A stretch of DNA of 64,000 bases from Camelus ferus (Eukaryota): assembly GCF_009834535.1 (NCBI RefSeq), contig NC_045700.1, positions 69,874,001-69,938,000 on the forward strand, in the 5' to 3' direction. The notes under the pieces were generated by a model, which ran no database searches, was not told where the DNA came from, and worked only from the letters and a program-made list of their open reading frames with translations. Both the position numbers and the translations under genes were made by a program. This document shows, piece after piece, positions 138 to 46,559 of this stretch. Numbering within the stretch: position 1 is the stretch's first letter; every line of letters starts with the position of its first letter.

Positions 138-815
138 CGGAGAAAACTCTAATTCAAAAAGATAGGGGGGAGGGTATAGCTGGTGGTAGAGTGCATGCTT
201 AGCATGCATGAGGTCCTGGGTTCAATTCCCAGTACCTCCTCTGAAAATAAATGAATAAACCTAATTACTTCTCTCCTGGAAAAAAAAACCAAAAAGATAT
301 ATGCACTCTAATGTTCATAGCAATACTACTTACAATAGCCAAGACATGGAAGCAACCTAAATGTCAAAGATGTGGTATATATATAAAACAGAATATTACT
401 TAGCTGTAAAAAAAAATGAAATAATGCCACTTGCAGCAACAACGGATGGACCTAGAGATTATCATACTAAGTAAGTCAGGCAGAGAAAGACAATTATCAT
501 ATGATATCACTTACATGTGGAATCTAAAATAACAATACAAATGAATTTATTTACAAAACAGAAAAAGACTCACAGACATAGAAAACAAACTTATGGTTAC
601 CAAAGGGGAAGTGGGGGAGAGGGATAAATCAGGAGTTTGGGATTAGCAGATACATACTACTATATATAAAAAAGATAACCAACAAGGACCTACTATATAG
701 CACAGGGAACTAATGGGAAAGAATCTAAAAAAGAATATATGCATATCACTTTGCTGTACACCTGAAACTAACACAACATTGTAAATTAACTATACCTCAA
801 TTAAAAAAATAAAAA
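138..815 (+). mobile_element. LINE-1 3' end (3' UTR and A-rich tail), interrupted by a SINE
   Basis: Typical L1 3' motifs (atgttcatagcaatactacttacaatagccaagacatggaagcaacctaaatgtc; gacctagagattatcatactaag) ending in an A-rich tail near 800-815. Shares long near-identical stretches with 19250-19810. Confidence 0.9.
165..289 (+). mobile_element. tRNA-derived SINE, Vic-1-like (camelid)
   Basis: tRNA-like head with A/B boxes (tagctggtggtagag ... gggttcaattccc), A-rich tail, and 10-bp target-site duplication caaaaagata at 155-164 and 290-299. Confidence 0.88.
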
Positions 816-5826: not shown

Positions 5827-5974
5827 CTTTTTCTTTCTTTGTGTGTGTGTGCGCGTGTGTGTAATTAGGTTAATTTATTTAATTTTTTTTCTTTAATGGA
5901 GGTACTGGGGATTGAACCCAGGATCTCATGCATGCTAAGCATGTGCTCTACCATTTGAGCTATACCCTCCCCTC
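5827..5974 (-). mobile_element. tRNA-derived SINE, Vic-1-like
   Basis: Reverse complement of the 165-289 element (ggaggtactggggattgaacccagg...gagctataccctcccctc). Candidate TSD catttttaa at 5818-5826 and 5980-5988. Confidence 0.88.
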
Positions 5975-7269: not shown

Positions 7270-7634
7270 TCAAAAGAGTAAGTGCCAAAAATTCCTTCCC
7301 TTTTCTCCACTCAAGTGACTATGTGTGGAAGAGTAGTCAAAAGATAACCTTTATAAATTGAGACATTAACATTGTTTGGCTGGCACTTCTGGGTGTTTCC
7401 CGTTTGCCTGCCTCCCACCTCCTCCCTGGAGTCTGTCTGAGTCGGCCTGTTCCCGCAGATTTTGAGGCCGTCTAGCTCTACGGGTCTCCACCCAGGCTTG
7501 GGACCTGCAGGAGGCCCTACGGGTAGAGACATCACAAGCTACACTAACAGAAGCGGCTTGGAGAACGGACCATTCGGGGAGCCGAGCCTGGAGTCCCGAG
7601 CTCATTGCAAGGAGCTCTCTTAGCTCGGACGTCA

Positions 7635-7696
7635 GAGGCGACAGGTGGGGACGGCCTCGCGCTGGCGGCGCGGCGGCGCCGGGCGGGCACCGGTGG
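7635..7696 (+). other. Putative non-coding first exon; start approximate
   Basis: GC-rich stretch without ATG ending at donor TGG|GTGAGC inside the CpG island. Confidence 0.5.
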
Positions 7697-7743
7697 GTGA
7701 GCGGGCGCCGGCTGGAGGTTGGGGGGGCCCAGGAGCCGCCGGC

Positions 7744-7882
7744 TTGGGGCAGGGAGGGGGGCGGAGTTGGCGGGGGGAGGGGTGGAGAGAGAGCGGGAGG
7801 GAGGGAGGGGGGAGGGGGAGGGGGAGGGGGAGGAGGGGGTGGGGGAAGGGAGGAGGGGGGTGGGGAAAGGAGAGGACGAGGG
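7744..7882 (+). repeat. G-rich, nearly all-purine tract with many G3-G6 runs (G-quadruplex-prone)
   Basis: gggagggagggagggggagggggagggggagggg..., more than 15 G-runs. Confidence 0.9.
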
Positions 7883-8013
7883 AAGCTGCGCTCCGTCGCC
7901 GCCCTGGCGGAGACAGACACTGCTTTCGTCTTCTCCCTTGATTTGCCACCCTTTTTTCTTCTTTTTGAAAAAACTGCCTGAAGATTCTCTTCATTCCAGT
8001 TTCTCCACTTTAT

Positions 8014-8061
8014 GAGAGAGAGAGAGAGAGGGAGAGAGGGAGAGAGGGAGAGGGAGAGAGA
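8014..8061. repeat. Imperfect (GA)n / (GGGAGA)n purine microsatellite
   Basis: Read directly. Confidence 0.93.
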
Positions 8062-8189
8062 AGCATTTCTACTCCATGTCCTCTTGACAGTTCTGCTTTC
8101 TCCCCATCTACCTACTCCAAGATGGACAACCACACCTTTTGATAACTGTTAACAGCCAAGAGAAGTGATCTCTACAGACCCAGTCTGGG

Positions 8190-8380
8190 AGATCAGTCAG
8201 CTGTAGAGCGTCCTCTGCCCAGCTCTGTGACCAAGGACATGTTCCTTAACCTCACTGTGCCTCAATTTTCTCATCTGGCAAATGGAGATAGTAAGAGCTC
8301 TTTATTTACAGGATTGTTTTAAAAGTTAAGCAATTTATAGAAAATGCTTAGCCTGGGGCCTGGCACACAGTAAGTGTAAA
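8190..8380 (+). mobile_element. MIR SINE
   Basis: ctgtgaccaaggacatgttccttaacctcactgtgcctcaattttctcatctggcaaatggagata...gcctggcacacagtaagtg. Confidence 0.8.
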
Positions 8381-10945: not shown

Positions 10946-11788
10946 TTGCACATCTGCCTCTTGCATAAAGCAATGATGCTCTGAACCTTTTTATCCTGGT
11001 AGAATATAAATGGCTCCTTGGTCCCTAGGTTTTCTGTCAGACTTGCCCTTTGCCCTTTGATCCCCCCATTGTCTCAGGCTGCTCACTAGGGACCCCTCCC
11101 CCTCATGCAGGGCTCCCCAGATCCCTCAGAGCTCCTAAGAATATCTTAAGCTCTGCCGCATTCCAAGGGGTGGTGTCACCACTGCAACGTAACCTCTTTC
11201 ACACTGGTTCTGCCGCCCATCCCAGAATGGAAGCAAAAGAAGGACTTACACAGGGGCCTCAATCAGTCCCTCAAGGGCAAGCGATCTGACCCCTTTCCCA
11301 CAACTGAGCCTGATCTGGAGAGTAAAGAAATCATCATGTCACATCATGTTATCAACTTAGAACAAGTCTCTCCTGATCAGATGCAAATGATGGCTACCAA
11401 AATTAAGCTTTTAAGAAAGAGACTAATAGCTAACCTTTAGTGAGCACTTACTCTGTGCCAGGCACTCTTACAAACGCATTACATGTATTAACTCCTTTAT
11501 GTCACAACCANNNNNNNNNNNNNNNNNNNNNNNNNNNNNNNNNNNNNNNNNNNNNNNNNNNNNNNNNNNNNNNNNNNNNNNNNNNNNNNNNNNNNNNNNN
11601 NNNNNNNNNNNNNNNNNNNNNNNNNNNNNNNNNNNNNNNNNNNNNNNNNTAATAGATGCTCTTGATCACTGTGATGCTGCGTCAGCAGTGCCCTCCAATC
11701 CTTCCACCCCCCATTGTTTTCAAGGTAATAGATTAAATTGAGTCACTGCCAAATTCAGAGAAATAAATCCTCAAAGCAAGGCCCAGGA

Positions 11789-15829: not shown

Positions 15830-16600
15830 AAAAAACTATCATTTTTTACATATATGAACACACATATGAAAAGACTTACACCTAAAATCATTCATTACAA
15901 CGAATTGGAAACAACCTACATGTACCATCAATTGGGGGCGGTTTAAATAAAGTATGGTAATTCATACAGTGAATAGTATGCAACCATTAAGAAGCATCTC
16001 TTTACTCACACAGAAAACAAACTGTGGTTATGGGAGGAGGGGGAGGGGTAGATTAGGAGTTCAGGATAAAGATACACATTACTATGTATGAAACAGATAA
16101 ACACCAAGAACTTGCTGTATAGCACAGGGAACTATATTCAGTTTCTTGTAATGAGCTGTAGTGGAAAAGAATCTGAATGTATATATATGTATGTATATGT
16201 GTAACTGAATCGCTTTGCTATACACCTGAAACTAACATTGTAAATCGACTACACTTCAATAAAAAAATAAGAATTAAAAAAAGCATCTCTTTAGATGATA
16301 GAACTCCAAGATACATTAAGTAAAAAAAAAATACTGTGAGCAATGTGTATAATGTGTTAAACTGTGTATAAAAAAAATCTCTCTGTATTGGCCTATATGT
16401 ACCCGCTACAACTCAGGAAGGCTACCCAGGAAACCAGCAACAGTGGTGTCCAAGGGGGAGGGAATCCAGCTAGGAGACATACCCTCTTATACTTAACCAA
16501 TGTTAAACCTCCTGAATATATTTTGGATTCAAAATTTGAATTAAAAAAACTGAAACTAAATAAAATGCTGTCTGTCACTTTTAACATAAGTTGCAATGGC
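15830..16600 (+). mobile_element. Old L1 (L1ME-like) 3' fragment hosting a younger L1
   Basis: acaacgaattggaaacaacctacatgtaccatcaattggg...ggtaattcatacagtgaatagtatgcaaccattaag, resuming after the insertion. Confidence 0.6.
16004..16280 (+). mobile_element. 5'-truncated younger L1 3' end with TSD
   Basis: Same family as 138-815. A-rich tail, flanked by direct repeat aagcatctcttt at 15992-16003 and 16281-16292. Confidence 0.88.
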
Positions 16601-17335: not shown

Positions 17336-18826
17336 CAGACATGAGAGACAGTGGCCTGAGCAGTTGGGGTGCAGATCCTGGAGTCAGACTGCCTATACTG
17401 AAGCCCTGACTCCTTCACTTTATGCCTTAAAAATCATGCAAGGTACTTAACCTCTGAGCCTCAGTTTCTTCAACTGACAGGGGCTGGGTCAAGTGGCCTG
17501 AAGTTCTCATCTGTCCTTGGAGAACCCTCCACCATTTCTGCCCTTCACCCTCATGCATAGTCCCCGATCTAAGCCTGGTACCTCTTGGCCCACAGCAGGC
17601 TTTTGTAAGGAACTGCCAGGAGGAGCAGGGAGCAGGGGATACAGGAGCCACAGGTGGGGCTTCCGTCAGCCCCGTGCTGCAGGACCTATCATTGAACCTC
17701 AGCTTCTCCATCTGTGAAATGGGAGTAATGATACATTTTGTACGGAGTTCTTGAAAGGCTTAATTAGGAAAATAAATTCAGAAATTCTGTGTAACGTATC
17801 ATGTAACATTTGCATCTAAATGACTATTTTTGATGTCTCCTTAGTGATGGAAGGAAATCACTATCTCATTTCTGAGTTTCAACTTCAAGGTCATACAACT
17901 TTTCTTGTGTATTAATAAGGTCCCACACTTATTCTTTAATAGAGAAAACTGACTTACGAAAATCATAAGGTATCTTGTGTTGTTAAGATTAAAATATATT
18001 ATTATTTTATTAAGTGTCAGCTCCTCTCCCGGGTTCTGAAGCCAGAACAAAGATGTACAATTAAATTCTTCTCAGGAATGGAAGAGATAGACCTCATCAA
18101 TATCAGGTATTGTGGGTTTGATGGCTTTGAATCCTAGTTCACCCTGCTGGCAGGCACGTCACCATTTGTCATCTCATCTGGCCCATCCTCAGTTTCCTCA
18201 TCTGCACAGTGGGAAACTTCACACTTAACAGGAAGGGGGTTGGGAAAATTAAACAAGGATTTATATGTGAGAGGCCTGGCCCTCAGCAGGGATCAATGAA
18301 TGTTTCTTCCTTTCTCCTTCATAAATAGAATACTTTATAGATGTGAACAGTCTTTGAAGATTATTATTTCGTGTAATTTTCACCTTACTGTTGACAGGCA
18401 GGTATGGAGGTCCCAGCATCATTATCTCCTTTTTACTAAAAAGGAAGCCAAGTCCTGGAAGCATTACAAGGTCACTCAAAGTTAGAGAAAACCCAGAGCT
18501 TCCCAACTACTGGTCAGATACTTTAATATTGGTAATAGTCCACTTAATCCGGGGCTTCTTTCTTTGGTAACTGTAACAGACTCAATGCCCTGAATATTTT
18601 TCCTGGCAAAAGTATCATTCAAGTGTCCTGGAATCATTGCATCTCGAAACTGGCTTGTGATTCCTCTACAACTCTCCTGCCAGTGGTCANNNNNNNNNNN
18701 NNNNNNNNNNNNNNNNNNNNNNNNNNNNNNNNNNNNNNNNNNNNNNNNNNNNNNNNNNNNNNNNNNNNNNNNNNNNNNNNNNNNNNNNNNNNNNNNNNNN
18801 NNNNNNNNNNNNNNNNNNNNNNNNNN

Positions 18827-19812
18827 TTAACTTCTAGAATATATGAATAGTTAATACAATTCAATAACAAAAAACTCCCCAAACCAAAAAACAAACAACC
18901 CAATCAAAAAATGGGCAGAAGACCTAAATAGGCATTTCTCCAATGAAGACATCCAGATGGCCAATAGACACACGAAAAGATGCTCACTATCACTATCAGA
19001 GAAATGCAAATCGAAACTACAATGAGCTTTCACCTCACACCAGTCAGAATGGCCATCATTCAAAACTCCACAAATGATAAGTACCGGAGAGGGTGTGGAG
19101 AATAGGGAACACTTCTACACTGTTGGTGGGAATGTAAATTGGTGCAGCCACTATGAAGAACAGAATGGAGATTCCTTAAAAAACAGAAAATAGTTACCCT
19201 ATGATACAGCAATCCCACTCCTCGGCATATATCCAGAGAAAACTCCAATTGGAAAAGATACATGCACCCCAGTGTTCATAGCAGCATTATTTACAATAGC
19301 CAATACATGGAGGCAACTTAAATGTCCATCGACAGATGACTGGATAAAGAAGATACAACGGAATATTACTCAGCCATAAAAAAGAATGAAATAATGCCAT
19401 TTGCAGCAACATGGGTGGACCTAGAGATTATAATACCAAATGAAGTAAGTCAGACAGAGAAAGACAAATATCATATGATATCACTTATATGTAGGATCTA
19501 AAAGAAATGACACAAATGAACTTATTTACAAAACAGAAAAAGACTCACAGACATAGAAAACAAACTTATGGTTACCAAAGGGAAAGAGGGTGGGGAGGGA
19601 TAAATTAGGAGTTTGGGATTAGCAGATACAAACTACTATATATAAAATAGATAAGCAACAAGGATTTATTGTATAGCACAGGGAATTATATCCATTATCT
19701 TGAAATAACCTATAATGAAAAAGAATATATATATATATATATATATAAAACTGAATCACTATGCTGTTCACCACACAACATTGTAAATCAACTATACTTC
19801 AATTAAAAAAAA
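18827..19812 (+). mobile_element. LINE-1 3' ~1 kb (ORF2 C-terminus remnant, 3' UTR, tail); 5' end hidden by N run
   Basis: aatcaaaaaatgggcagaagacctaaataggcatttctcc... The minus-strand ORF 18851-19063 ([36 protein letters not shown]) is the familiar antisense reading of L1 ORF2. Internal (TA)n at ~19727-19746. Confidence 0.95.
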
Positions 19813-20730: not shown

Positions 20731-20899
20731 GGGCAGAGTCCTGTAGGGTCAGAAGATCTTCCTACAGCAGACTGGATGAGTGCTCAGGGATGGAATTTTC
20801 TAGGAGCTGTGCTGGATGCTTAGCTAACCTGGCAGGCAGAGCCTCTGACTGGATAGGACTCAGCTGGAGTCTGCAGGGAAGCTTTATAGCAGATGGTTG

Positions 20900-21118
20900 A
20901 AAACATGGGCTCTGGAGCTGGGCGGCCTGACTTAGAATCTTGTTTCTGCCATATGCCAACTGTATGACATTCAGGAGGCTATTTTACTTCTCGATGCTTT
21001 ATTTTTCTCATCTGTAAAATGGGTAATGTTACCTACTTCTTAGGTTAGTTTTGTGAGTTAAATCAGTTCTTGAATGTAAAACTTAGAGCCTGGCACAGAG
21101 TAAGTGTTCAGTAATGTT
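20900..21118 (+). mobile_element. MIR SINE
   Basis: catgggctctggagctggg...tttttctcatctgtaaaatgggtaat...cctggcacagagtaagtgttcagtaatgttag. Confidence 0.85.
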
Positions 21119-21577
21119 AGCAATTGTGATTATTTATATCTCTTTCCGTTTCCCTTTTCAATATTTTTATTTCCTATCCTCATCCCCTGAAATGTACAAT
21201 GCTTCCTACACGCACCAAGTAAAAATGAATGAGCTGTCCTGTGACCAGGCAGGAAATGCACAAATGAAACATGTAGACTCACTTGGATGGCCTGTGTGCC
21301 CTTCTTGGTTTGAACTCTCCATCCTTTACTGTACAAGCCTGAGATTTGTGTCTTTCCATAAGGCAATCCCTAAGAATCCAGGAGCTACCATGTCAACAAG
21401 AAGGTTTATTTAGGGAGAGCTGGTAACACTGAACATCTGCAAGAAAAGATGGGGTCTTTGGAGCAAGGACTGGTCTGGGAGTCAGAAAGCCGAGTGTGTC
21501 CCTGTGAGTCTCATGAAGAAGCAGGCCGAGTTACAAAGTCTTGAAAAGAGTGGACTGGAAAGTGGGCTTTAGTGATG

Positions 21578-21815
21578 ACAAAGCAAGTCTTGGCATGGAA
21601 GGATCTCAGATCCCTCACACTGCCCCAGAGCACAACATCCCAGGCCTTTGATAAGAAGAGACAAGGAAAGGCAGAAACAGAGAACAGACCAAACACTCGT
21701 GGGGCTCATGATGGTGGCATTAGCCAGTGCTGTAGACTTGCAGGGACTTCCAAGCTCATGTGGGTCACCCTCCTAACCTCAGCTGATCCGGAGTTCTTAG
21801 GTTACATCCCAGTCC
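21578..21815 (+). repeat. Inverted repeat, left arm (238 bp)
   Basis: Compared base by base with the reverse complement of 22973-23210: 235/238 identical, no indels. Confidence 0.98.
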
Positions 21816-21899
21816 TTCTATAATATGGTGCCAAAATTGCTGAACAAAAACATATAACACTAAAGCATTGTGGACACTAAATACACACAAAAAATTTAC

Positions 21900-22110
21900 T
21901 GTAAAATTCCTCACTTGCAGCTTCTGGAGGCTCCATAAATATGTTCTTATCTCATTTCCATAGCAATTATCAACCTAATATACTCTACGTGTTGCCTGGA
22001 GCAGGACAAGGATCTCAGTCTGTTTTGTGTGCTGACGTATCTCAGATGTCCAGAAAGTGCCAGACACAGAGCAGTTACTAGGTGCTCATCAGGGGTTGAG
22101 TGAATGGTGA
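21900..22110 (+). mobile_element. L2 3' fragment inside the inverted-repeat spacer
   Basis: gcaggacaaggatctcagtctgttttgtgtgctgacgtatctcagatgtccagaaagtgccagacacag...gttgagtgaatgg. Confidence 0.6.
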
Positions 22111-22220
22111 TGATGATGGTATCTCATCCCAGGAAGTACAAACCATAATTCTTCAAGCCCTAAGGGAAGAACTAAACTGTTGTCAAGGGGTAAGAAAAAG
22201 GATCGTTTCAGTAATATAAG

Positions 22221-22593
22221 TGTTTTAGGATGAATTGTGTTCCTCCAAAAGTCATATGAAGTCCACCCTCAGTACCCCAGAATGTGACTGTTATTTGGAT
22301 CTAGGCTTTTTAANNNNNNNNNNNNNNNNNNNNNNNNNNNNNNNNNNNNNNNNNNNNNNNNNNNNNNNNNNNNNNNNNNNNNNNNNNNNNNNNNNNNNNN
22401 NNNNNNNNNNNNNNNNNNNNNNNNNNNNNNNNNNNNNNNNNNNNNNNNNTGAGAAAGGCCCCAGAAGAAATCAATTCTGCTGACACCTTGACCTTGGACT
22501 TCTAGCCTCCAGAATTGTGAGAAAATAAATTTCTGTTGTGTAAGCCACCCAGTCTGTGCTACATTGTTGTGGTGGCCCTAGCAAACTAATACA
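22221..22593 (+). mobile_element. MLT1A/B/C-type solo LTR (middle is N)
   Basis: TG start tgttttaggatgaattgtgttcctccaaaa; end ctgctgacaccttgaccttggacttctagcctccagaattgtgag...ctagcaaactaataCA. Confidence 0.9.
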
Positions 22594-22624
22594 GTGAGTA
22601 ATGAATCAAGTTAATTATTTTGAA

Positions 22625-22972
22625 CATTTGTAGCAAAAAACCCTTTTGTTTTGCTGCCCAGAATCATCCTCTCTATTCTATTTTTAATTTTTCCTTTTTG
22701 AGACACTTCTCCCCCTCCACACTCTTAGTTCCTGTGGCTCCAGGCTGGGAAAATCAGTGTATTCCATTCCCTTGCCTATGGTGATTCAATTGCCCATGGC
22801 CACGTGACCCAATTTGGGTCAGTGATCTAGAGAAGAGAAGCTGGTGGCTATCTCGGTCCCATGGGGAAAGAGTCTGTCTAAGAGGAAACAGGAAAGCAGA
22901 GCTCAGCCATGGAGAGAGACAGATTCAGGGCAAATACATGACTCTTGATCAAAGTCCCACCTTGCAGAGCTG
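22625..22972 (+). mobile_element. Old MLT1 (J/K/L-like) LTR fragment abutting the right inverted-repeat arm
   Basis: ccctccacactcttagttcctgtggctcc...ggccacgtgacccaatttgggtcagtga...cagccatggagagagacaga. Confidence 0.55.
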
Positions 22973-23210
22973 GGACTGGGATGTAACCTAAGAACTCCAG
23001 ATCAGCTGAGGTTAGGAGGGTGACCCACATGAGCTTGGAAGTCCCTGCAAGTCTACAGCACTGGCTAGTGCCACCATCATGAGCCCCACGAGTGTTTGGT
23101 CTCTTCTCTGTTTCTGCCTTTCCTTGTCTCTTCTTATCAAAGGCCTGGGATGTTGTGCTCTGGGGCAGTGTGAGGGATCTGAGATCCTTCCATGCCAAGA
23201 CTTGCTTTGT
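22973..23210 (-). repeat. Inverted repeat, right arm (238 bp)
   Basis: Reverse complement of 21578-21815 with 3 substitutions. Confidence 0.98.
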
Positions 23211-24319
23211 TCCTGATCAGTTTCTTTTACTCCATGGTCATTTATTTCTAGTTCATTCACCTCTGAGGGGAGCAAAGAATGGAGAGGAAGAGGGCCTGAA
23301 GCCAGAGGGCTGTGGGATGAAAAGGGGAGTCCATTTATGGAACATTTAGTAAGTGCCTTCCATGTGCCAGATGCTGTGTTAGATGCTGGGGCAGGAGTCA
23401 GTGTCGCAAGGATGGACAAACGCCATCCCCCCACAGGAACTCTCAGCACCCTTAACTGGATGCGAAGCAGAGCTTGGGAGAGTGATGAACTCCTAGACAA
23501 TAGAGGATTTGCAGTTGCCTTCTAGTTACCTCAAGAATCAGTCTTCTTACAGCAGCAAGTTACGCTGGTAAAACAGTAACAGCTATTTTAGCTACTGTCA
23601 ATATAAAATGAACTATATTTGCCCATTTTATAAGTGGTTCAAGGTTATCCTTTCTCGCCTCTGTTCCCTGTCCTCCACCACCCAAGCCAGACACCCAACC
23701 GATTCGTCCCCGATGGCTGCCTGTGATTACTGTCCTAATTTGTTCTTTCTTCATCTGCTACAGACTGCCTATTTTCTGTCCCTTCTGNNNNNNNNNNNNN
23801 NNNNNNNNNNNNNNNNNNNNNNNNNNNNNNNNNNNNNNNNNNNNNNNNNNNNNNNNNNNNNNNNNNNNNNNNNNNNNNNNNNNNNNNNNNNNNNNNNNNN
23901 NNNNNNNNNNNNNNNNNNNNNNNNNNNNNNNNNNNNNNNNNNNNNNNNNNNNNNNNNNNNNNNNNNNNNNNNNNNNNNNNNNNNNNNNNNNNNNNNNNNN
24001 NNNNNNNNNNNNNNNNNNNNNNNNNNNNNNNNNNNNNNNNNNNNNNNNNNNNNNNNNNNNNNNNNNNNNNNNNNNNNNNTGATATACAGTGTGACAAGAG
24101 CTAGTCCAAATCCCCAAATATTTATAGAAAGCAATTCTTCATCGTGGGAACACTAATAGTAACACCTATTTTTACCATGGAAGACACAGGGGACCCATGC
24201 GTATAGAGAATAACCTGAGACTGGTTATTAATTCATACCTGGGGTCGGTGTAATGGGAAACTGGGAAAAGGGACCTTCCTGTGTTCCAGGATTGTAATCA
24301 TTTTCTTTGATCCCCACCA

Positions 24320-27030: not shown

Positions 27031-28747
27031 GGGCACCCCTCTGTTTTCTGGGTGGTACAGTCATCATCATCGACACTTGTAGCTCTTAAGGATGGCAGAA
27101 TAAATAGTAAAGGGGGGTCAAGGTCTCAGGGTGTAGATGGGAGAAGAAAACCCGAGGAGAAAGAAAAGGAAAGTGGAGCAAGTAGAAGAAAGCAGAGATG
27201 ACTGAAATTTTTTTGTCTCTTTTACATGTATACATCGGTGTGAATGATTACAAAACTGATGGAAGGGTGAAATGTTTAGTAGAAAATCAAAACACTTTCC
27301 TTCACTTATATTGTACTGTAAATACTCGAATATTTTTATGTTCTGCTAAAAACACCTGGGAGCCTTTCTCTTCAGTAAATGAAACAATAAAGATTAATGA
27401 GTTAATTCGGTAAAGCTGATTTGAATTGCACAGAAGCTGNNNNNNNNNNNNNNNNNNNNNNNNNNNNNNNNNNNNNNNNNNNNNNNNNNNNNNNNNNNNN
27501 NNNNNNNNNNNNNNNNNNNNNNNNNNNNNNNNNNNNNNNNNNNNNNNNNNNNNNNNNNNNNNNNNNNNNNNNNNNNNNNNNNNNNNNTGAAAGCCAGAAC
27601 AAACGACAGCTATCGCTGTGTACAAATATCCATTTGCACACATATATAATGTCAAAAAACCTACAGATGATGTCCATTAAACAAAATAAATATTTCCTTT
27701 CTTACTCTTGGATTATAATATCTGAGCTACAAATTCAAGAAATCCTTCTCTCCAATAATTTTTCCTCCTCCTTTCAGCTCATATGTTTTGCAGGGTCACT
27801 ACCAAGGGTTGGTTCTACAGCCACTGGAACGTCTCACCTTAAGAAGGAAAGGAGATTCTACACCCGACCAGCTAGATCTCTACCACAGAACCACCACAGA
27901 TACAGATCTGCCCCGCAGGCGTCTCTTTACTTCTCCCACTCCTTTCTAATTGGGGTTCCCCATCTCTGTAGCTGCGGCTTCATGGCTCCAAGAAGAGCTA
28001 TTGTCCCTCATTAAGGAGGCTGCAACACTCTTGCTGCCTAACTGCCTCCCACGCAGCTCACAACTTCATTCTGCCTGAGAGCGAGCTGCCAAGAGTCTCT
28101 GGGAACCTGTGGGCAAGCTGAGCCGGAGGAGGAAAATAGAAGGAAGGAGGGCCTTTGTAGCCAAGATCTGAAACGTGCTACACACCCCACCATTATCTTA
28201 ATGCATGGAGAGCGGGGTCGGGAGGCCTTTGCTGAAACCCTTATGTGGTCTATCAAGTTGTCACATCAAACCTCTGCACACACAGGGCATTTGTCCCCTC
28301 CTGTGAGCAAACAAAAGGAAAAGAGTCAGTCACTCCTTTCGACCACCAGGCCCCCTCCTTGGCTGAGAGTCTGTCTCTGACTTCCCTGGAAGGTGGGGGT
28401 TGGGGGGGTGGCTCTGAATCCCAGTGGGGATGGATGGATAAGTCACTGGGGGTGGGGACCAAATCCTGGAAAAGGTACTCCTGCCTGGAGCTATGGGCTG
28501 AAGGGCCAGGCAAGTCCCCCTGTGCTTGGCCTTCTCAGGCCCTATTATTTCTTGCCCTTGGCAGCCTGTGGAACTAAAAATGGGCAGTAGGAATGGGGAG
28601 ATAGCTGAGGAGGGCAGGGAACTCTGCTGGGCTCCCTGTGACTGGGCTGCCTGGGGAGGGATCTGAGTGGGCCCGAGGCTCTGTATACACTATCAACTCA
28701 GGTTAAAGGGGAGGGGACCCAGCCTGGGTAAGGCTGGCCACTCGGCT

Positions 28748-34429: not shown

Positions 34430-35290
34430 TTATGGGTTTACCGCCGAGGCCCTGATTCTCCTCCGGGTGTGGAAGGGCTGCCTCAGGAGTTAGTCCCACG
34501 GTTGCCACCTTGTGTGCTGAAGGCCGAAGCCGTATTCCTCCGCGCTCGGGGCCCCAGCGCCGCTCGCTGCATCGCAACCGCACGGCGGAGGGTTTTCAGT
34601 CCTACCAGCAGGGAGCACCAGAGGCAGCTTCCAGAACCGGGGAAATCCGGGAACCTAGTCACGTCTGCAAAGCACCGTCTGGCTTTCTCTCTTCCCCGCC
34701 CGGCTTTCTCTCTTCCCCGCCCGTCAGAAACTGTTTTCCAAATCGAGGTATGGGACTTGTCGTTCAAGCATGGTGATGCCAAAATAGTCCACCTTTAGGA
34801 TTTTGTTTCCTCGCAGCTAGCACACTGATAAAAAAGTAAAAGTACTTTGTGTGACTGAACTCCTGACACGGTCAGACCCCAGTGAAGGGAGGGAGGGGAG
34901 TCACGGGGGGGAATTAATGGAAAGGAACGAAGAGCAGAAACCTCTGATGCTGATAAAGATCAGTTTTGTGTGATATCCTAGCCTGCTTCAGAGTGGGAAG
35001 GCGACAGTGGAAGGACTCCGCTGGATTTGCCAGTGCCCCGTCAAGGTACGTAACTGAAATCGGCGGGGCAGAAATTTGTTTCTAAATCCTTTCCAGATGC
35101 TTTATAGTAAACATGAAATTAGTCATTTACATGGAGGAGTTTGAGGAAGTAGTTAAAATTGAAGTCGGTGATTAATCTAATAAAAAGCCATTAGCCTCAA
35201 GAAGTAAGGGGGTGGGGGAGGCGCAGAAGACACATCCCCTCCCCCACCCTCCCCCATTTTCTCTGCGTTTGGGGGTCGGTGGGGGTTTTC
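34430..35290 (+). promoter_or_regulatory. CpG-rich promoter 2 (candidate alternative promoter)
   Basis: CpG cluster; near-consensus kB site GGGGAAATCC at 34639-34648; GTCACGT at 34658-34664; duplicated GC box; donors GAG|GTATGG (34747) and AAG|GTACGT (35045). Confidence 0.7.
34681..34722. repeat. Perfect 21-bp tandem duplication containing GC box CCCCGCCC
   Basis: ggctttctctcttccccgccc x2. Confidence 0.97.
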
Positions 35291-43580: not shown

Positions 43581-46559
43581 GTTACCATCTTCATCATCAT
43601 CCTTCACTAGAGGGCTCCTATTAAGAGCCGTTCTGGCCCAGTTCCAACGAACAAGTGAGAATGAACATGACTGACACTGCAACTCTTCCCACCATGGTCA
43701 GGATGTCCCTTCAAGGAGAATGGCGAGAGGGGCAATGCAGAATGCCAGGCTCCCAAGTATTTCTCTGCTTAATAGATTTTGAGACTGGCAAACATATGAT
43801 TGTGCCCTTTTTCCTTCTAGTTTTGCAGTCTCCAGCAAAAACAGTGTCCTCCACCCAACTCTGGCTCCAGCCCTTGATCTGTGGCATTGCTTCCTGTTAC
43901 TCTAGCAGGTCCCTCATGCAGGATTCATCACTGCCTGCCCCAAAATAAGCAGTGAGGAAGACCACACACATTTCTCTATTAATCAAAGACTATTTTTAGG
44001 ATTGAGAGAAAGTCTTTACTTAATCATCCTTTCCCATTGGTATGAAGCAGAAGCAGCAATGGCAGTGGGTGGAGAATGAACTACAGTCAACCTGCACTCC
44101 CAGTTTTTGCTTATTTCTCCATCGGGGAAGCGAAATAGAAGAGGAAGCTTGAAAAAAGAGAACTGGCCTCAGCCCTCCACTTAGAATACAAGCCTGAGAG
44201 CCTTTTCCAGGCAGTTTTCTAGTTTGTGGATGTGCAGATTGAACTGTGCACAACTCTGGGAGGCAGTGCCTACCTCATTATAATGTGAATTGTACAGCGT
44301 ATGACCTGCAGGACCCACAGGACACCCTGCAGATTCTCCTTCCTGGTCCAGCTCAGCACAAGCATTTGGTTCACTTTTCTTCTCCCCTAACACTCACACT
44401 CACACCGTAGCACACAGGGCTCCCCACAAGTAACTCTTGAGGATACTCCATTTCTCAGGCTCTCCAAGAGATACGTTTTCTTTCCTACTTACTACTATAT
44501 TTGGGGAGAAATTGTGTGTTTCTGGAGGTCGAGGTATGAAATAATATGTATGTGAGTCAAATGACATAGAGGAGAAGTAAAAGTGACTCTTTAGGGGACA
44601 GTTTTACCTTTTAGAAGATGTTGAATACTAGACGACCCCTTTCCATGGCTGGTATTTGAATTGGTAGATTCATAGGCTGAAAAACAATAAGGGTTTTACC
44701 TGTGAACGTGAAAAAGTCTTGAGGAAAAAAAAGCTATTTTCCTTACCCCAAGACAGGGGAAAACAAAGTGGATGCCTTGATGCCTCAGCCTCGTAATGAA
44801 TTAGATTGTTTTGACAACCCTAAACTGCTATCATGGAGGGAAGGTTGATCTAGGATTTAAAAAGCATTGGAGAAAATAGTATTTTTATTTAAGATGTTGA
44901 AGGGTGAAACACCGCAGGTGCTGTGATGCTTAAGTTCTGAGAGGAGAGCTTTTGACAGAGCAAGAGCATGAAATAGTTAATGCCTGACACCTGCCGTGAG
45001 GAGATGCCCAGATTTGAACAGCAGATGTGCAGCGATGGGGGATGACAGACAAGCATGAGGAGCCCCAGCTTCCAGCTGCAGTGCAAATTCAGAGGCTAGA
45101 CCAGGGAGGCAGGAGGGATTCTAGCCCATCTGATTCCAGCCAAAAAGACAGACTGGCTTTTGCATAGCCCTGATGAATTTTTTTTGTTTGTTTTTTGAGA
45201 TCTCTTAGAGTCGCCTTGGGTAAGAATTATTCTCCTAGCTGTACTTGTCAATCAAATGAAAACTAGTTAAAATAATGCTGTTTTAAGGGCTGAAGAGAAT
45301 GAGGATGACACACCAGAGCAAGGCAGTTAAGGGAGAGGTAGAGTAAAGAGTGGCTCCGAAACGGAAGGACAGTTTTAATGGGAAATTTGGTGTGTGTGTG
45401 AAAGGTCGAGAGAGAGAGAGAGAGAGAGGTATGAGATATCAAGGAAATAGAAATGGGGATGAAAAAGATCAGAGGGAATTGAATACATCTGAAAAAAATC
45501 TTGAGATCTATCTAACTACCCCCAACTCGTTTCCAAATACACGTATGTGTGTATATATGTGTGTGCGCATGTATGTGTGTACGTATTTATACTTCATTAT
45601 TTCATTGCTGATAATACATATACTGGAGATACTGCCAAAAAAAAAATGTTTGGTTTACTGATTTGCTGAACTGTGGTGGGGCTTGGAAAAGCCTGCTGCC
45701 TGGTGCCTCCCCACCTCAGGTGCGCATGCATACAGCCACATACACACACAGAGCTTAGGCTGAGCAGGGCAACTTGGGATTCTGAGAACCAACACTGGAG
45801 AGAGAAAAAAGCCATAATTAGTGTTAAGTGTTGANNNNNNNNNNNNNNNNNNNNNNNNNNNNNNNNNNNNNNNNNNNNNNNNNNNNNNNNNNNNNNNNNN
45901 NNNNNNNNNNNNNNNNNNNNNNNNNNNNNNNNNNNNNNNNNNNNNNNNNNNNNNNNNNNNNNNNNNNNNNNNNNNNNNNNNNNNNNNNNNNNNNNNNNGG
46001 GAAAAAGAGGCTAAAACAATCATGAAAGAGAAAGCTCAATGTGTGTCAGGGTGAGAAGGTACAGGAGGGTTATACAAACACTTTCCATCACTGCTGCCCG
46101 CCTCGCTGCTTCCTTACTCACAGCTCCCAAGAAATCTGCTATCACGGTTTTCCTTAGAATTCTTACTATTTAGCACAGTTGTCTGCTAGGAAGCTCAGTC
46201 ACTTCCCCAGGAGCACATAAGCCTGAAAACAGCCACAGTGCATGACAAGCTCAGAGGCACACGACACTGAAGTTTATTTTTTATGTGTGTTGGTAGGAGT
46301 TTGACTTAAATCAAGGGAGGTACGGGAGCTGAGTGCCACGCAGGAGGGGGCTGCAGCCCTGTGTGTGCCACGGGGTAACTCTGGCCCTGAGGCCTTGATT
46401 GTTGTTTTATCTTAATTACAGTACATGACACATATGTGTACCTCCCCCACCCCCAGAGTAGTCCTCTTAACTGAGAGTGAAAACAGAGAAACAGTAATTT
46501 GAGTAGAATATTGGAAATGAGAATTGTAGCCAGATTTGTAAAGAGATTCTACAAACGGT

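What the first reader, a model, noticed from the sequence alone, without database searches (positions are those of the whole stretch)
21578..23210. Near-perfect 238-bp inverted duplication enclosing a 1157-bp segment
Seen: 21578-21815 equals the reverse complement of 22973-23210 at 235/238 positions, with no indels and sharp ends. The differences are C/G, T/C and a CpG-type C/T. The arms are not a young SINE or LINE, while neighbouring repeats (L2, MLT1) are heavily diverged, so this identity is anomalous. The old MLT1 at 22625-22972 seems to stop at the right-arm edge. Known: close inverted repeats arise by replication template switching, can be homogenised by arm-to-arm gene conversion, mediate recurrent inversion of the spacer, and form long dsRNA (ADAR substrate, back-splicing aid) when transcribed. 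Inference: a recent lineage-specific inverted duplication, or an older flip-flop cassette whose spacer (L2 + MLT1B/C + MLT1J) may be inversion-polymorphic. If promoter 1 drives a + strand gene, its intron would carry a ~240-bp RNA stem.
Basis: partly seen in the sequence, partly recalled or inferred. Interest (0 to 1): 0.72.

Follow-up and report, generated by a model that had tools for sequence, protein, structure and literature searches.

The report
Young 238-bp inverted duplication in camel
A 238-letter stretch of ordinary non-coding camel DNA is really present twice, head-to-head about 1.2 kb apart. It looks like a young copying or repair accident with no sign of a function, so it is real but ordinary.

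Summary
21578-21815 is the reverse complement of 22973-23210 at 235/238 positions, with no indels and sharp ends.

It is not an assembly artefact or a multi-copy repeat:
- In contig sets of two other organism labels, separate 1x contigs carry three arm/flank junctions: spacer into right arm, left arm into spacer, and left flank into left arm.
- The shared arm core is one contig at about 2x depth that stops exactly at the arm edge.
- Raw reads of a third label run from the right arm into the right flank.

Only the difference at 22999 is confirmed in other animals. The window's C at 23103 is contradicted by 5/5 reads.

No homology remains beyond the arm edges. There is no target-site duplication, microhomology, coding domain or Rfam family.

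Best reading: one young, neutral repair or replication error. It was either an inverted copy inserted 1.16 kb away or a 1.4-kb micro-inversion with one staggered break. I could not tell which, because no outgroup sequence or long reads were reachable.

The flip-flop, gene-conversion and dsRNA ideas are unsupported or untested. Continuity across the N run 22314-22449 was tested only indirectly.

First readers noted similar small inverted duplications elsewhere in this genome (unchecked).

The parts
21578..21815 (+). Left arm (X) of the inverted duplication, 238 nt
   Evidence: One search shows both of its junctions: contig records 4/8 carry the outer junction with 21548-21577, and records 2/6 carry the inner junction with 21816-21845; 20 contig sets hold 0.99 of the sampled words of 20800-22313.
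22973..23210 (-). Right arm (reverse complement of X), 238 nt
   Evidence: records 1/5 run from 22529 through 22972 into the arm up to 23029 with no differences. Records 3/7 (23000-23210) have about 2x word depth and stop exactly at 23210. Raw reads of X23 continue from the arm into 23211-23325 without clipped parts.
21816..22972 (.).
   Evidence: No similarity between its two ends. No other copy in the window.
22314..22449 (.). N run of 136 inside the spacer; probably a deliberate mask rather than a true gap; its letters were not looked at
   Evidence: seven N runs of odd lengths 134-292 in the window, none flanked by splice sites. By eye they cut into old repeats. Earlier unchecked notes place such runs on conserved exons. 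By length alone, contig records 2/6 (599 nt) must run about 44 nt past 22313.
22999..22999 (.). The one arm-to-arm difference confirmed in other animals (partner 21789; CpG-type)
   Evidence: in X1 and X6 the spacer-linked contig has the window's letter. The contig linked to 21816-21845 differs at this one place.
23068..23068 (.). Difference seen in the window (partner 21720); 1 of 4 raw reads carries the window's right-arm letter
   Evidence: table 3.
23103..23103 (.). Window's right-arm letter C, not supported elsewhere (partner 21685): private variant or base error
   Evidence: table 3: 5 of 5 raw reads and the 2x contigs of X1 and X6 read G.

Best explanation
This is a real, two-copy, young local inverted duplication of 238 bp of unique non-coding DNA in a camel genome. 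It is shared by animals filed under three organism labels.

It most likely arose in one event by an error of DNA replication or break repair with blunt joins. My preferred version (about 55% of this reading): a copy of X was made on the opposite strand and inserted 1157 bp away, leaving the spacer in its old orientation (an inverted interspersed duplication). The alternative version (about 35-40%) is listed as the first rival.

Since then the arms have diverged neutrally by one to three substitutions, which is roughly one to six million years at mammalian rates (inference, with a wide error). Nothing indicates a function. It is best taken as a neutral structural mutation that makes a potential 238-bp stem only if the region is transcribed.

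Shown: both arms, three junctions directly and the fourth by short read overlaps and the contig stop, copy number two, sharp ends, no flanking homology. Inferred: the mechanism, the age and neutrality.
For: - Arms 235/238 with no indels.
- Contig sets X1 and X6 (two organism labels): separate 1x contigs for spacer-to-right-arm, left-arm-to-spacer and left-flank-to-left-arm.
- One collapsed arm-core contig at 19.3 against about 10.4 (X1) and 36.8 against about 14.7 (X6) word depth, ending exactly at 23210. That implies a second continuation there.
- Raw reads of a third label cover 23211-23325 continuous with the arm.
- 20 contig sets hold 0.99 of the words of the left side.
- No third copy in the window.
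- No homology beyond the arm edges: outer flanks z -0.4 to -0.1; inner flanks z 1.6-1.8, reached by 26-43 of 500 shuffles.
- No target-site duplication and no shared bases at the junctions.
- No Pfam domain in arm ORFs and no Rfam family.
- Known kinds with this anatomy exist. Duplication-flanked inversions and interspersed duplications are in human variant catalogues (PMC5338099). Inverted duplications of 46 bp to 1.9 kb (median 321 bp) sit at fly inversion breakpoints, one-sided in 12 of 18 (PMC1885836).
Against: - No outgroup sequence and no long read could be obtained, so the single-copy ancestral state, the age and the orientation of the spacer relative to the ancestor are not shown.
- The right-arm/right-flank junction rests on two raw reads that overlap the arm by only about 8-12 nt, plus the logic of the contig stop. 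No contig was laid on 23211-23325 in X1 or X6, and the tool says such a hole proves nothing.
- Continuity and orientation across the N run 22314-22449 were not shown directly.
- Zero microhomology at both joins is less typical of replicative template switching than of end joining.
- Some runs may be the source of the assembly itself.
Confidence: 0.72

Rival explanations
1. Micro-inversion with one staggered breakpoint (dupINV type). The ancestor had one X next to the spacer. Nicks staggered on both sides of X, plus a break at the other end of the spacer, were filled in and rejoined with the about 1.4-kb segment inverted. This left X at both ends in inverted orientation. The anatomy is the same as in the best explanation, but the spacer is inverted relative to the ancestor.
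For: A one-sided inverted duplication of non-repetitive DNA with blunt joins is what the staggered-break model predicts. 238 bp lies inside the reported size range of 46 bp to 1.9 kb, median 321 bp (PMC1885836). CNV-flanked inversions are a recognised class in humans (PMC5338099). The absence of microhomology suits end joining.
Against: No evidence that the spacer is inverted. My by-eye lead was that the reverse complement of 21331-21577 continues the old LTR ending at 22972. It got no support from alignment tests or window searches. The documented cases are mostly far larger inversions.
Confidence: 0.27
2. An older inverted repeat (flip-flop cassette) whose arms are kept nearly identical by arm-to-arm gene conversion, and whose spacer inverts recurrently.
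For: Very high arm identity beside old, diverged repeats. Such conversion-maintained inverted repeats exist in this genome according to an earlier follow-up note (s1-148981; not checked here).
Against: No diverged homology beyond either arm edge. The 22999 difference has the same arm assignment in two other organism labels. One to three differences in 238 nt needs no homogenisation if the copy is a few million years old. Orientation polymorphism cannot be seen with the data reachable.
Confidence: 0.06
3. Assembly or scaffolding artefact. Either one arm is spurious, or the piece 22450-23787 between two N runs was placed in the wrong orientation, so that the true repeat is direct or the two halves are not neighbours.
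For: N runs lie at 22314-22449 and 23788-24079. Adjacency across them was not shown directly. Both Logan contigs break near the first N run, at about 22357 and 22529.
Against: Both arms with their own flanks and a 2x core are seen in independent runs of other labels, so neither arm is spurious. The seven N runs have odd lengths of 134-292. Earlier unchecked notes place such runs on conserved exons. Together these point to deliberate masks over contiguous sequence. By eye, and from my own knowledge rather than any tool test, the letters left and right of the N run look like the 5' and 3' parts of one old LTR in the same orientation.
Confidence: 0.05
4. A mobile element with long terminal inverted repeats, or a young multi-copy repeat that happens to sit twice here.
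For: Inverted terminal repeats with sharp ends.
Against: Arm-core word depth is about twice the flanks, not many-fold. There is no target-site duplication. No other copy lies in 64 kb. No transposase-like ORF or Pfam hit.
Confidence: 0.01

Closest known systems
Inverted interspersed duplications and duplication-flanked inversions (iDUP, dupINV/INVdup) of human structural-variant catalogues (Collins et al. 2017, PMC5338099)
   Same: A unique segment is present twice in inverted orientation around a short intervening segment. It is a one-event complex rearrangement with two new junctions.
   Different: Those were called as polymorphisms in people, mostly at kilobase scale. Here the state looks shared by all camel runs examined, the copy is only 238 bp, and the sub-class (spacer inverted or not) is unknown.
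Inverted duplications at Drosophila inversion breakpoints, staggered-break model (Ranz et al. 2007, PMC1885836)
   Same: Inverted duplication of non-repetitive DNA at the two ends of a segment. It is one-sided, within the reported size range, and has blunt joins.
   Different: The fly inversions are chromosomal in scale and were proven with outgroups. Here the enclosed segment is 1.2-1.4 kb and its inversion is not shown.
Short template-switch mutations (Loytynoja and Goldman 2017, PMC5453318; Walker et al. 2021, PMC7954356)
   Same: A nearby stretch is copied from the opposite strand, creating a perfect inverted repeat in one event.
   Different: Those events are described as short-range; from my own recollection they are tens of bases. 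Here 238 bp were copied 1.16 kb away, nothing appears replaced, and there is no microhomology.
Conversion-maintained inverted repeats and palindromes of mammalian sex chromosomes
   Same: Near-identical inverted arms around a spacer.
   Different: Those are kilobases long, old and shared across orders. Here the arms are 238 bp with no diverged homology outside them, and nothing shows great age.

Membership tests
Local inverted duplication (iDUP / dupINV class of complex structural variant) | Two copies of otherwise unique sequence in inverted orientation, close together | tested here: met
   235/238, 1157 nt apart; no third copy in the window; arm core at about 2x flank depth.
Local inverted duplication (iDUP / dupINV class of complex structural variant) | Both copies and their junctions present in genomic DNA independent of the assembly | tested here: met
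   three junctions are carried by contigs in two organism labels. The fourth is supported by raw reads of a third label with short overlaps and by the contig stop at 23210.
Local inverted duplication (iDUP / dupINV class of complex structural variant) | Single-copy ancestral state in an outgroup | not testable with these tools
   No mammalian outgroup DNA was reachable. The ORF route, the metagenome scan and the search for a gene in the window all failed.
Staggered-break inversion (Ranz 2007) | Enclosed segment inverted relative to the ancestral order | not testable with these tools
   Needs an outgroup. The repeat-continuity tests had no power.
Staggered-break inversion (Ranz 2007) | Inverted duplication of non-repetitive DNA at the ends of the segment, size 46 bp to 1.9 kb | tested here: met
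   238 bp, two copies only; size range from PMC1885836.
Short template-switch mutation | Short inverted copy of immediately neighbouring sequence that replaces the local sequence | tested here: not met
   238 bp copied over 1157 bp, well beyond what the papers call short-range (the tens-of-bases scale is my own recollection). Replacement of local sequence cannot be judged without an outgroup.
Conversion-maintained inverted repeat / flip-flop cassette | Older, diverged homology continuing beyond the near-identical tract | tested here: not met
   flank alignments are no better than shuffles; in-register identity is 24-31%.
Conversion-maintained inverted repeat / flip-flop cassette | Both orientations of the spacer present in the population | not testable with these tools
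   No long-read run was listed. The junctions are the same in both orientations.
Transposon with terminal inverted repeats / young interspersed repeat | Target-site duplication and many copies in the genome | tested here: not met
   No duplication at the flanks. Depth is about 2x, not many-fold.
Assembly artefact | At least one junction or arm without support in raw data | tested here: not met
   One search supports both arms. Adjacency across the N run remains untested.

The most novel reading that the evidence does not exclude
The repeat could be more than a scar. Its spacer may flip between orientations in camel populations. Or, if the region is transcribed, the arms may form a 238-bp double-stranded RNA stem that is edited or processed. 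Or it may be one of an unusually large number of small (130-330 bp) young inverted duplications about 1 kb apart, as first readers noted repeatedly in this genome. That last reading would point to a lineage-specific replication or repair signature.
Probability: 0.07. Interest if true: 0.5.

Novelty: new member of a known kind. Interest (0 to 1): 0.15.

Why it matters
On its own it matters little. It is a clean natural example of a small inverted duplication with blunt junctions, useful as a dated marker for camel phylogeny or as one data point on how such rearrangements form. It would gain interest only under two conditions. One is a census showing that camels carry an excess of such events. 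The other is long reads or RNA data showing that the spacer flips or that the stem is made and processed. The practical result is that the feature is real, and that one of the three reported arm differences (23103) is probably a private variant or a base error.

Tried and rejected
Only one lay was left, so I used it on the right arm.
2. A search for long-read or single-layout DNA runs listed none. Spacer orientation per molecule could therefore not be scored, and no RNA search was left.
3. Repeat continuity across the four possible ancestral junctions. I joined the flank pairs, searched them against the rest of the window, and aligned them to the two halves of the in-window LTR. Nothing was above chance. 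One hit of the arm to the LTR 5' part (z 3.3-4.3) is a gapped 50-nt match and weak after about 18-20 comparisons per test set, so I dropped it. My by-eye lead, that the reverse complement of 21331-21577 is the missing 3' part of the LTR ending at 22972, stays unsupported.
4. Outgroup through ORFs. The 162-aa ORF across the right-flank junction has no relatives in the protein collection.
5. A metagenome scan with a 22-mer of the arm gave no match.
6. Outgroup through a host gene. No convincing coding exon was found by ORF listing or codon-usage scoring, so no protein was available to fetch orthologous loci.
7. Coding or RNA-gene nature of the arms: no Pfam hit and no Rfam hit.
8. Transposon reading rejected: no target-site duplication, two copies only.
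9. I did not read, fill or look up the letters of the N run. Only contig lengths were used to reason about it.

Full report
**Observation**

Reading the sequence, the repeat finder and a direct comparison agree. 21578-21815 is the reverse complement of 22973-23210 over 238 nt with 235 matches and no indels, and 1157 nt lie between the arms.

The three mismatches are 21685/23103, 21720/23068 and 21789/22999. The last one is at a CpG of the left arm.

Similarity ends abruptly. In register, the first 20-200 nt beyond either end of the arms are 24-31% identical, which is random. No other copy of the arm, the spacer or the flanks lies in the window. The next most similar repeat pairs in the 64 kb are 84-91% alike. 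A 99% match of 238 nt is far beyond chance: alignment score 1163 against 71 +/- 14 for shuffles.

**Is it real DNA or an assembly product?**

Twenty contig sets of public runs, filed under three coded organism labels, hold 0.99 of the sampled words of 20800-22313. That stretch contains the left arm and both of its junctions.

In both X1 and X6 the picture is what a de Bruijn assembler gives for a two-copy inverted repeat:
- A 501-nt contig at single depth runs from 22529 through the spacer end into the right arm, up to 23029, without a difference.
- A 599-nt contig at single depth matches 22973-23029 with one difference. It then continues into letters that are the reverse complement of 21816-21845, which is the left arm's inner junction.
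- A 211-nt contig covers 23000-23210 at 19.3 against about 10.4 (X1) and 36.8 against about 14.7 (X6) word depth, roughly double. It stops exactly at the arm's outer edge.
- A contig of about 1820 nt at single depth overlaps 23181-23210 and continues into the reverse complement of 21548-21577, which is the left arm's outer junction.

A 2x contig that stops at 23210 while only one 1x continuation is listed implies a second continuation. No contig was laid on 23211-23325 in these two runs, but the tool warns that records are filtered and a hole proves nothing.

In the raw reads of X23 the coverage is continuous from the arm into 23211-23325, and none of the seven reads has a part that does not fit. 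By my reconstruction from the depth bins, the reads that enter the flank overlap the arm by only about 8-12 nt.

So both arms exist and the copy number is two. That excludes a young multi-copy repeat. The structure is shared by animals under three labels.

**The differences between the arms**

The 22999 difference is real and shared. In X1 and X6 the spacer-linked contig has the window's letter, and the contig linked to 21816-21845 has the other letter.

At 23103, all 5 raw reads and the 2x contigs read G, the left-arm state. If the right arm carried the window's C, five of five would happen about 3% of the time. The window's letter is therefore probably a private variant or a base error.

At 23068, 3 of 4 reads carry the left-arm state and 1 carries the window's. 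The arms thus differ at one to three of 238 places.

**The N run**

I was asked to test continuity first and not to look up the masked letters. I did not read them. What I can say:
- The window has seven N runs of odd lengths, 134-292. None is flanked by splice sites, and by eye they cut into old repeats.
- Earlier unchecked notes on this genome report such runs sitting on conserved coding exons.
- By length alone, the 599-nt contigs must continue about 44 nt past 22313, so real letters exist there in other runs.
- By eye, and from my own knowledge rather than any tool, the letters left and right of the run look like the 5' and 3' parts of one old LTR in the same orientation.

None of this proves that 22313 and 22450 are joined as drawn. 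If the run were a true gap, the 1.3-kb piece 22450-23787 could in principle be misoriented. I give that about 5%.

**What it is not**

- Not an old larger duplication with a converted core. Sensitive alignments of 100-480 nt of outer and of inner flanks are no better than shuffles.
- Not a transposon. There is no target-site duplication and there are only two copies.
- Not an L1-mediated retrocopy, since there is no A-tail.
- Not coding and not a known RNA. The arm is open in one frame, but the ORFs have no Pfam domain. A 162-aa ORF across the right junction has no relatives. Rfam finds only two tRNA-Ala matches far away.

**How it most likely arose**

The junctions are blunt. The bases on the two sides of each arm edge share nothing, and nothing is inserted. 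Two one-event histories give this anatomy.

(a) An inverted copy of X was made from the opposite strand, or a fragment was captured, and it was joined into a break 1157 bp away. The spacer keeps its orientation.

(b) The segment of about 1.4 kb was inverted, with a break staggered on both sides of X, so that X ends up at both ends.

Both are known kinds:
- Human catalogues list interspersed duplications and duplication-flanked inversions (PMC5338099).
- In Drosophila, 17 of 29 fixed inversions carry inverted duplications of non-repetitive DNA at their breakpoints. The median is 321 bp, the range is 46 bp to about 1.9 kb, and 12 of 18 are one-sided (PMC1885836).
- Short template-switch events create inverted repeats at a much smaller scale (PMC5453318, PMC7954356, PMC8755829).

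I lean to (a), at about 55 to 35-40. Copying 238 nt from the strand just behind a fork asks less than copying or rejoining 1.4 kb. That is a prior, not a result.

Telling the two apart needs an outgroup. Every route to one failed:
- repeat continuity within the window;
- ORF homologues;
- a metagenome scan;
- a host-gene protein to fetch orthologous loci, since no exon was found.

**Age and function (inference)**

One to three differences in 238 nt is 0.4-1.3% between the arms. At about 1-2 x 10^-9 per site and year this is roughly one to six million years, with a wide Poisson error. That is compatible with a copy shared by closely related camels without any homogenisation.

I found no sign of function. 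The arms would pair as RNA (duplex energy -507 kcal/mol), which is trivially true of any such repeat.

**Verdict**

The flip-flop, gene-conversion and dsRNA ideas are unsupported or untested.

This is an ordinary, probably neutral structural mutation and a new example of a known kind.

First readers have noted several other small young inverted duplications in this genome (unchecked). A census could show whether that is more than a reading habit.

Noticed in passing
window 170-241 (+) and 5897-5969 (-): Two tRNA-Ala(AGC) matches (Rfam 46 and 60 bits; ARAGORN agrees) in opposite orientation 5.6 kb apart. They form the 76-nt, 84% inverted pair I2. They may be real tRNA genes or tRNA-derived repeats.
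   Followed up: partly
window 23103: The window's letter C is contradicted by 5 of 5 raw reads and by the contigs of two other labels, which all read G. It is likely a private variant or a consensus error in the assembly.
   Followed up: partly
window N runs 4-137, 11511-11649, 18690-18826, 22314-22449, 23788-24079, 27440-27587, 45835-45998: Seven N runs of odd lengths (134-292) with no splice sites at their edges. Several appear by eye to cut into old interspersed repeats. They look like deliberate masks rather than scaffold gaps.
   Followed up: partly
window 292-712 and 19253-19746 (also 16035-16192): L1-like 3' end copies in direct orientation, 85-91% alike. They are the youngest ordinary repeats in the window and a yardstick for how unusual 99% is.
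   Followed up: no
window about 7370-8150 and about 34440-34800: Two G+C-rich, low-complexity stretches with long open frames on both strands and no protein-like translation. They may be CpG-island promoters. No coding exon was recognisable anywhere in the window.
   Followed up: partly
window 21003-21125: An old interspersed repeat with weak copies at 8266-8377 (+) and 11425-11507 (-). The read laying filter tripped at 20994-21032, at its edge.
   Followed up: no
window about 22357 and about 22529: In both X1 and X6 the Logan contigs break at the same two places either side of the N run. This suggests 31-mers there that recur elsewhere in the genome.
   Followed up: no
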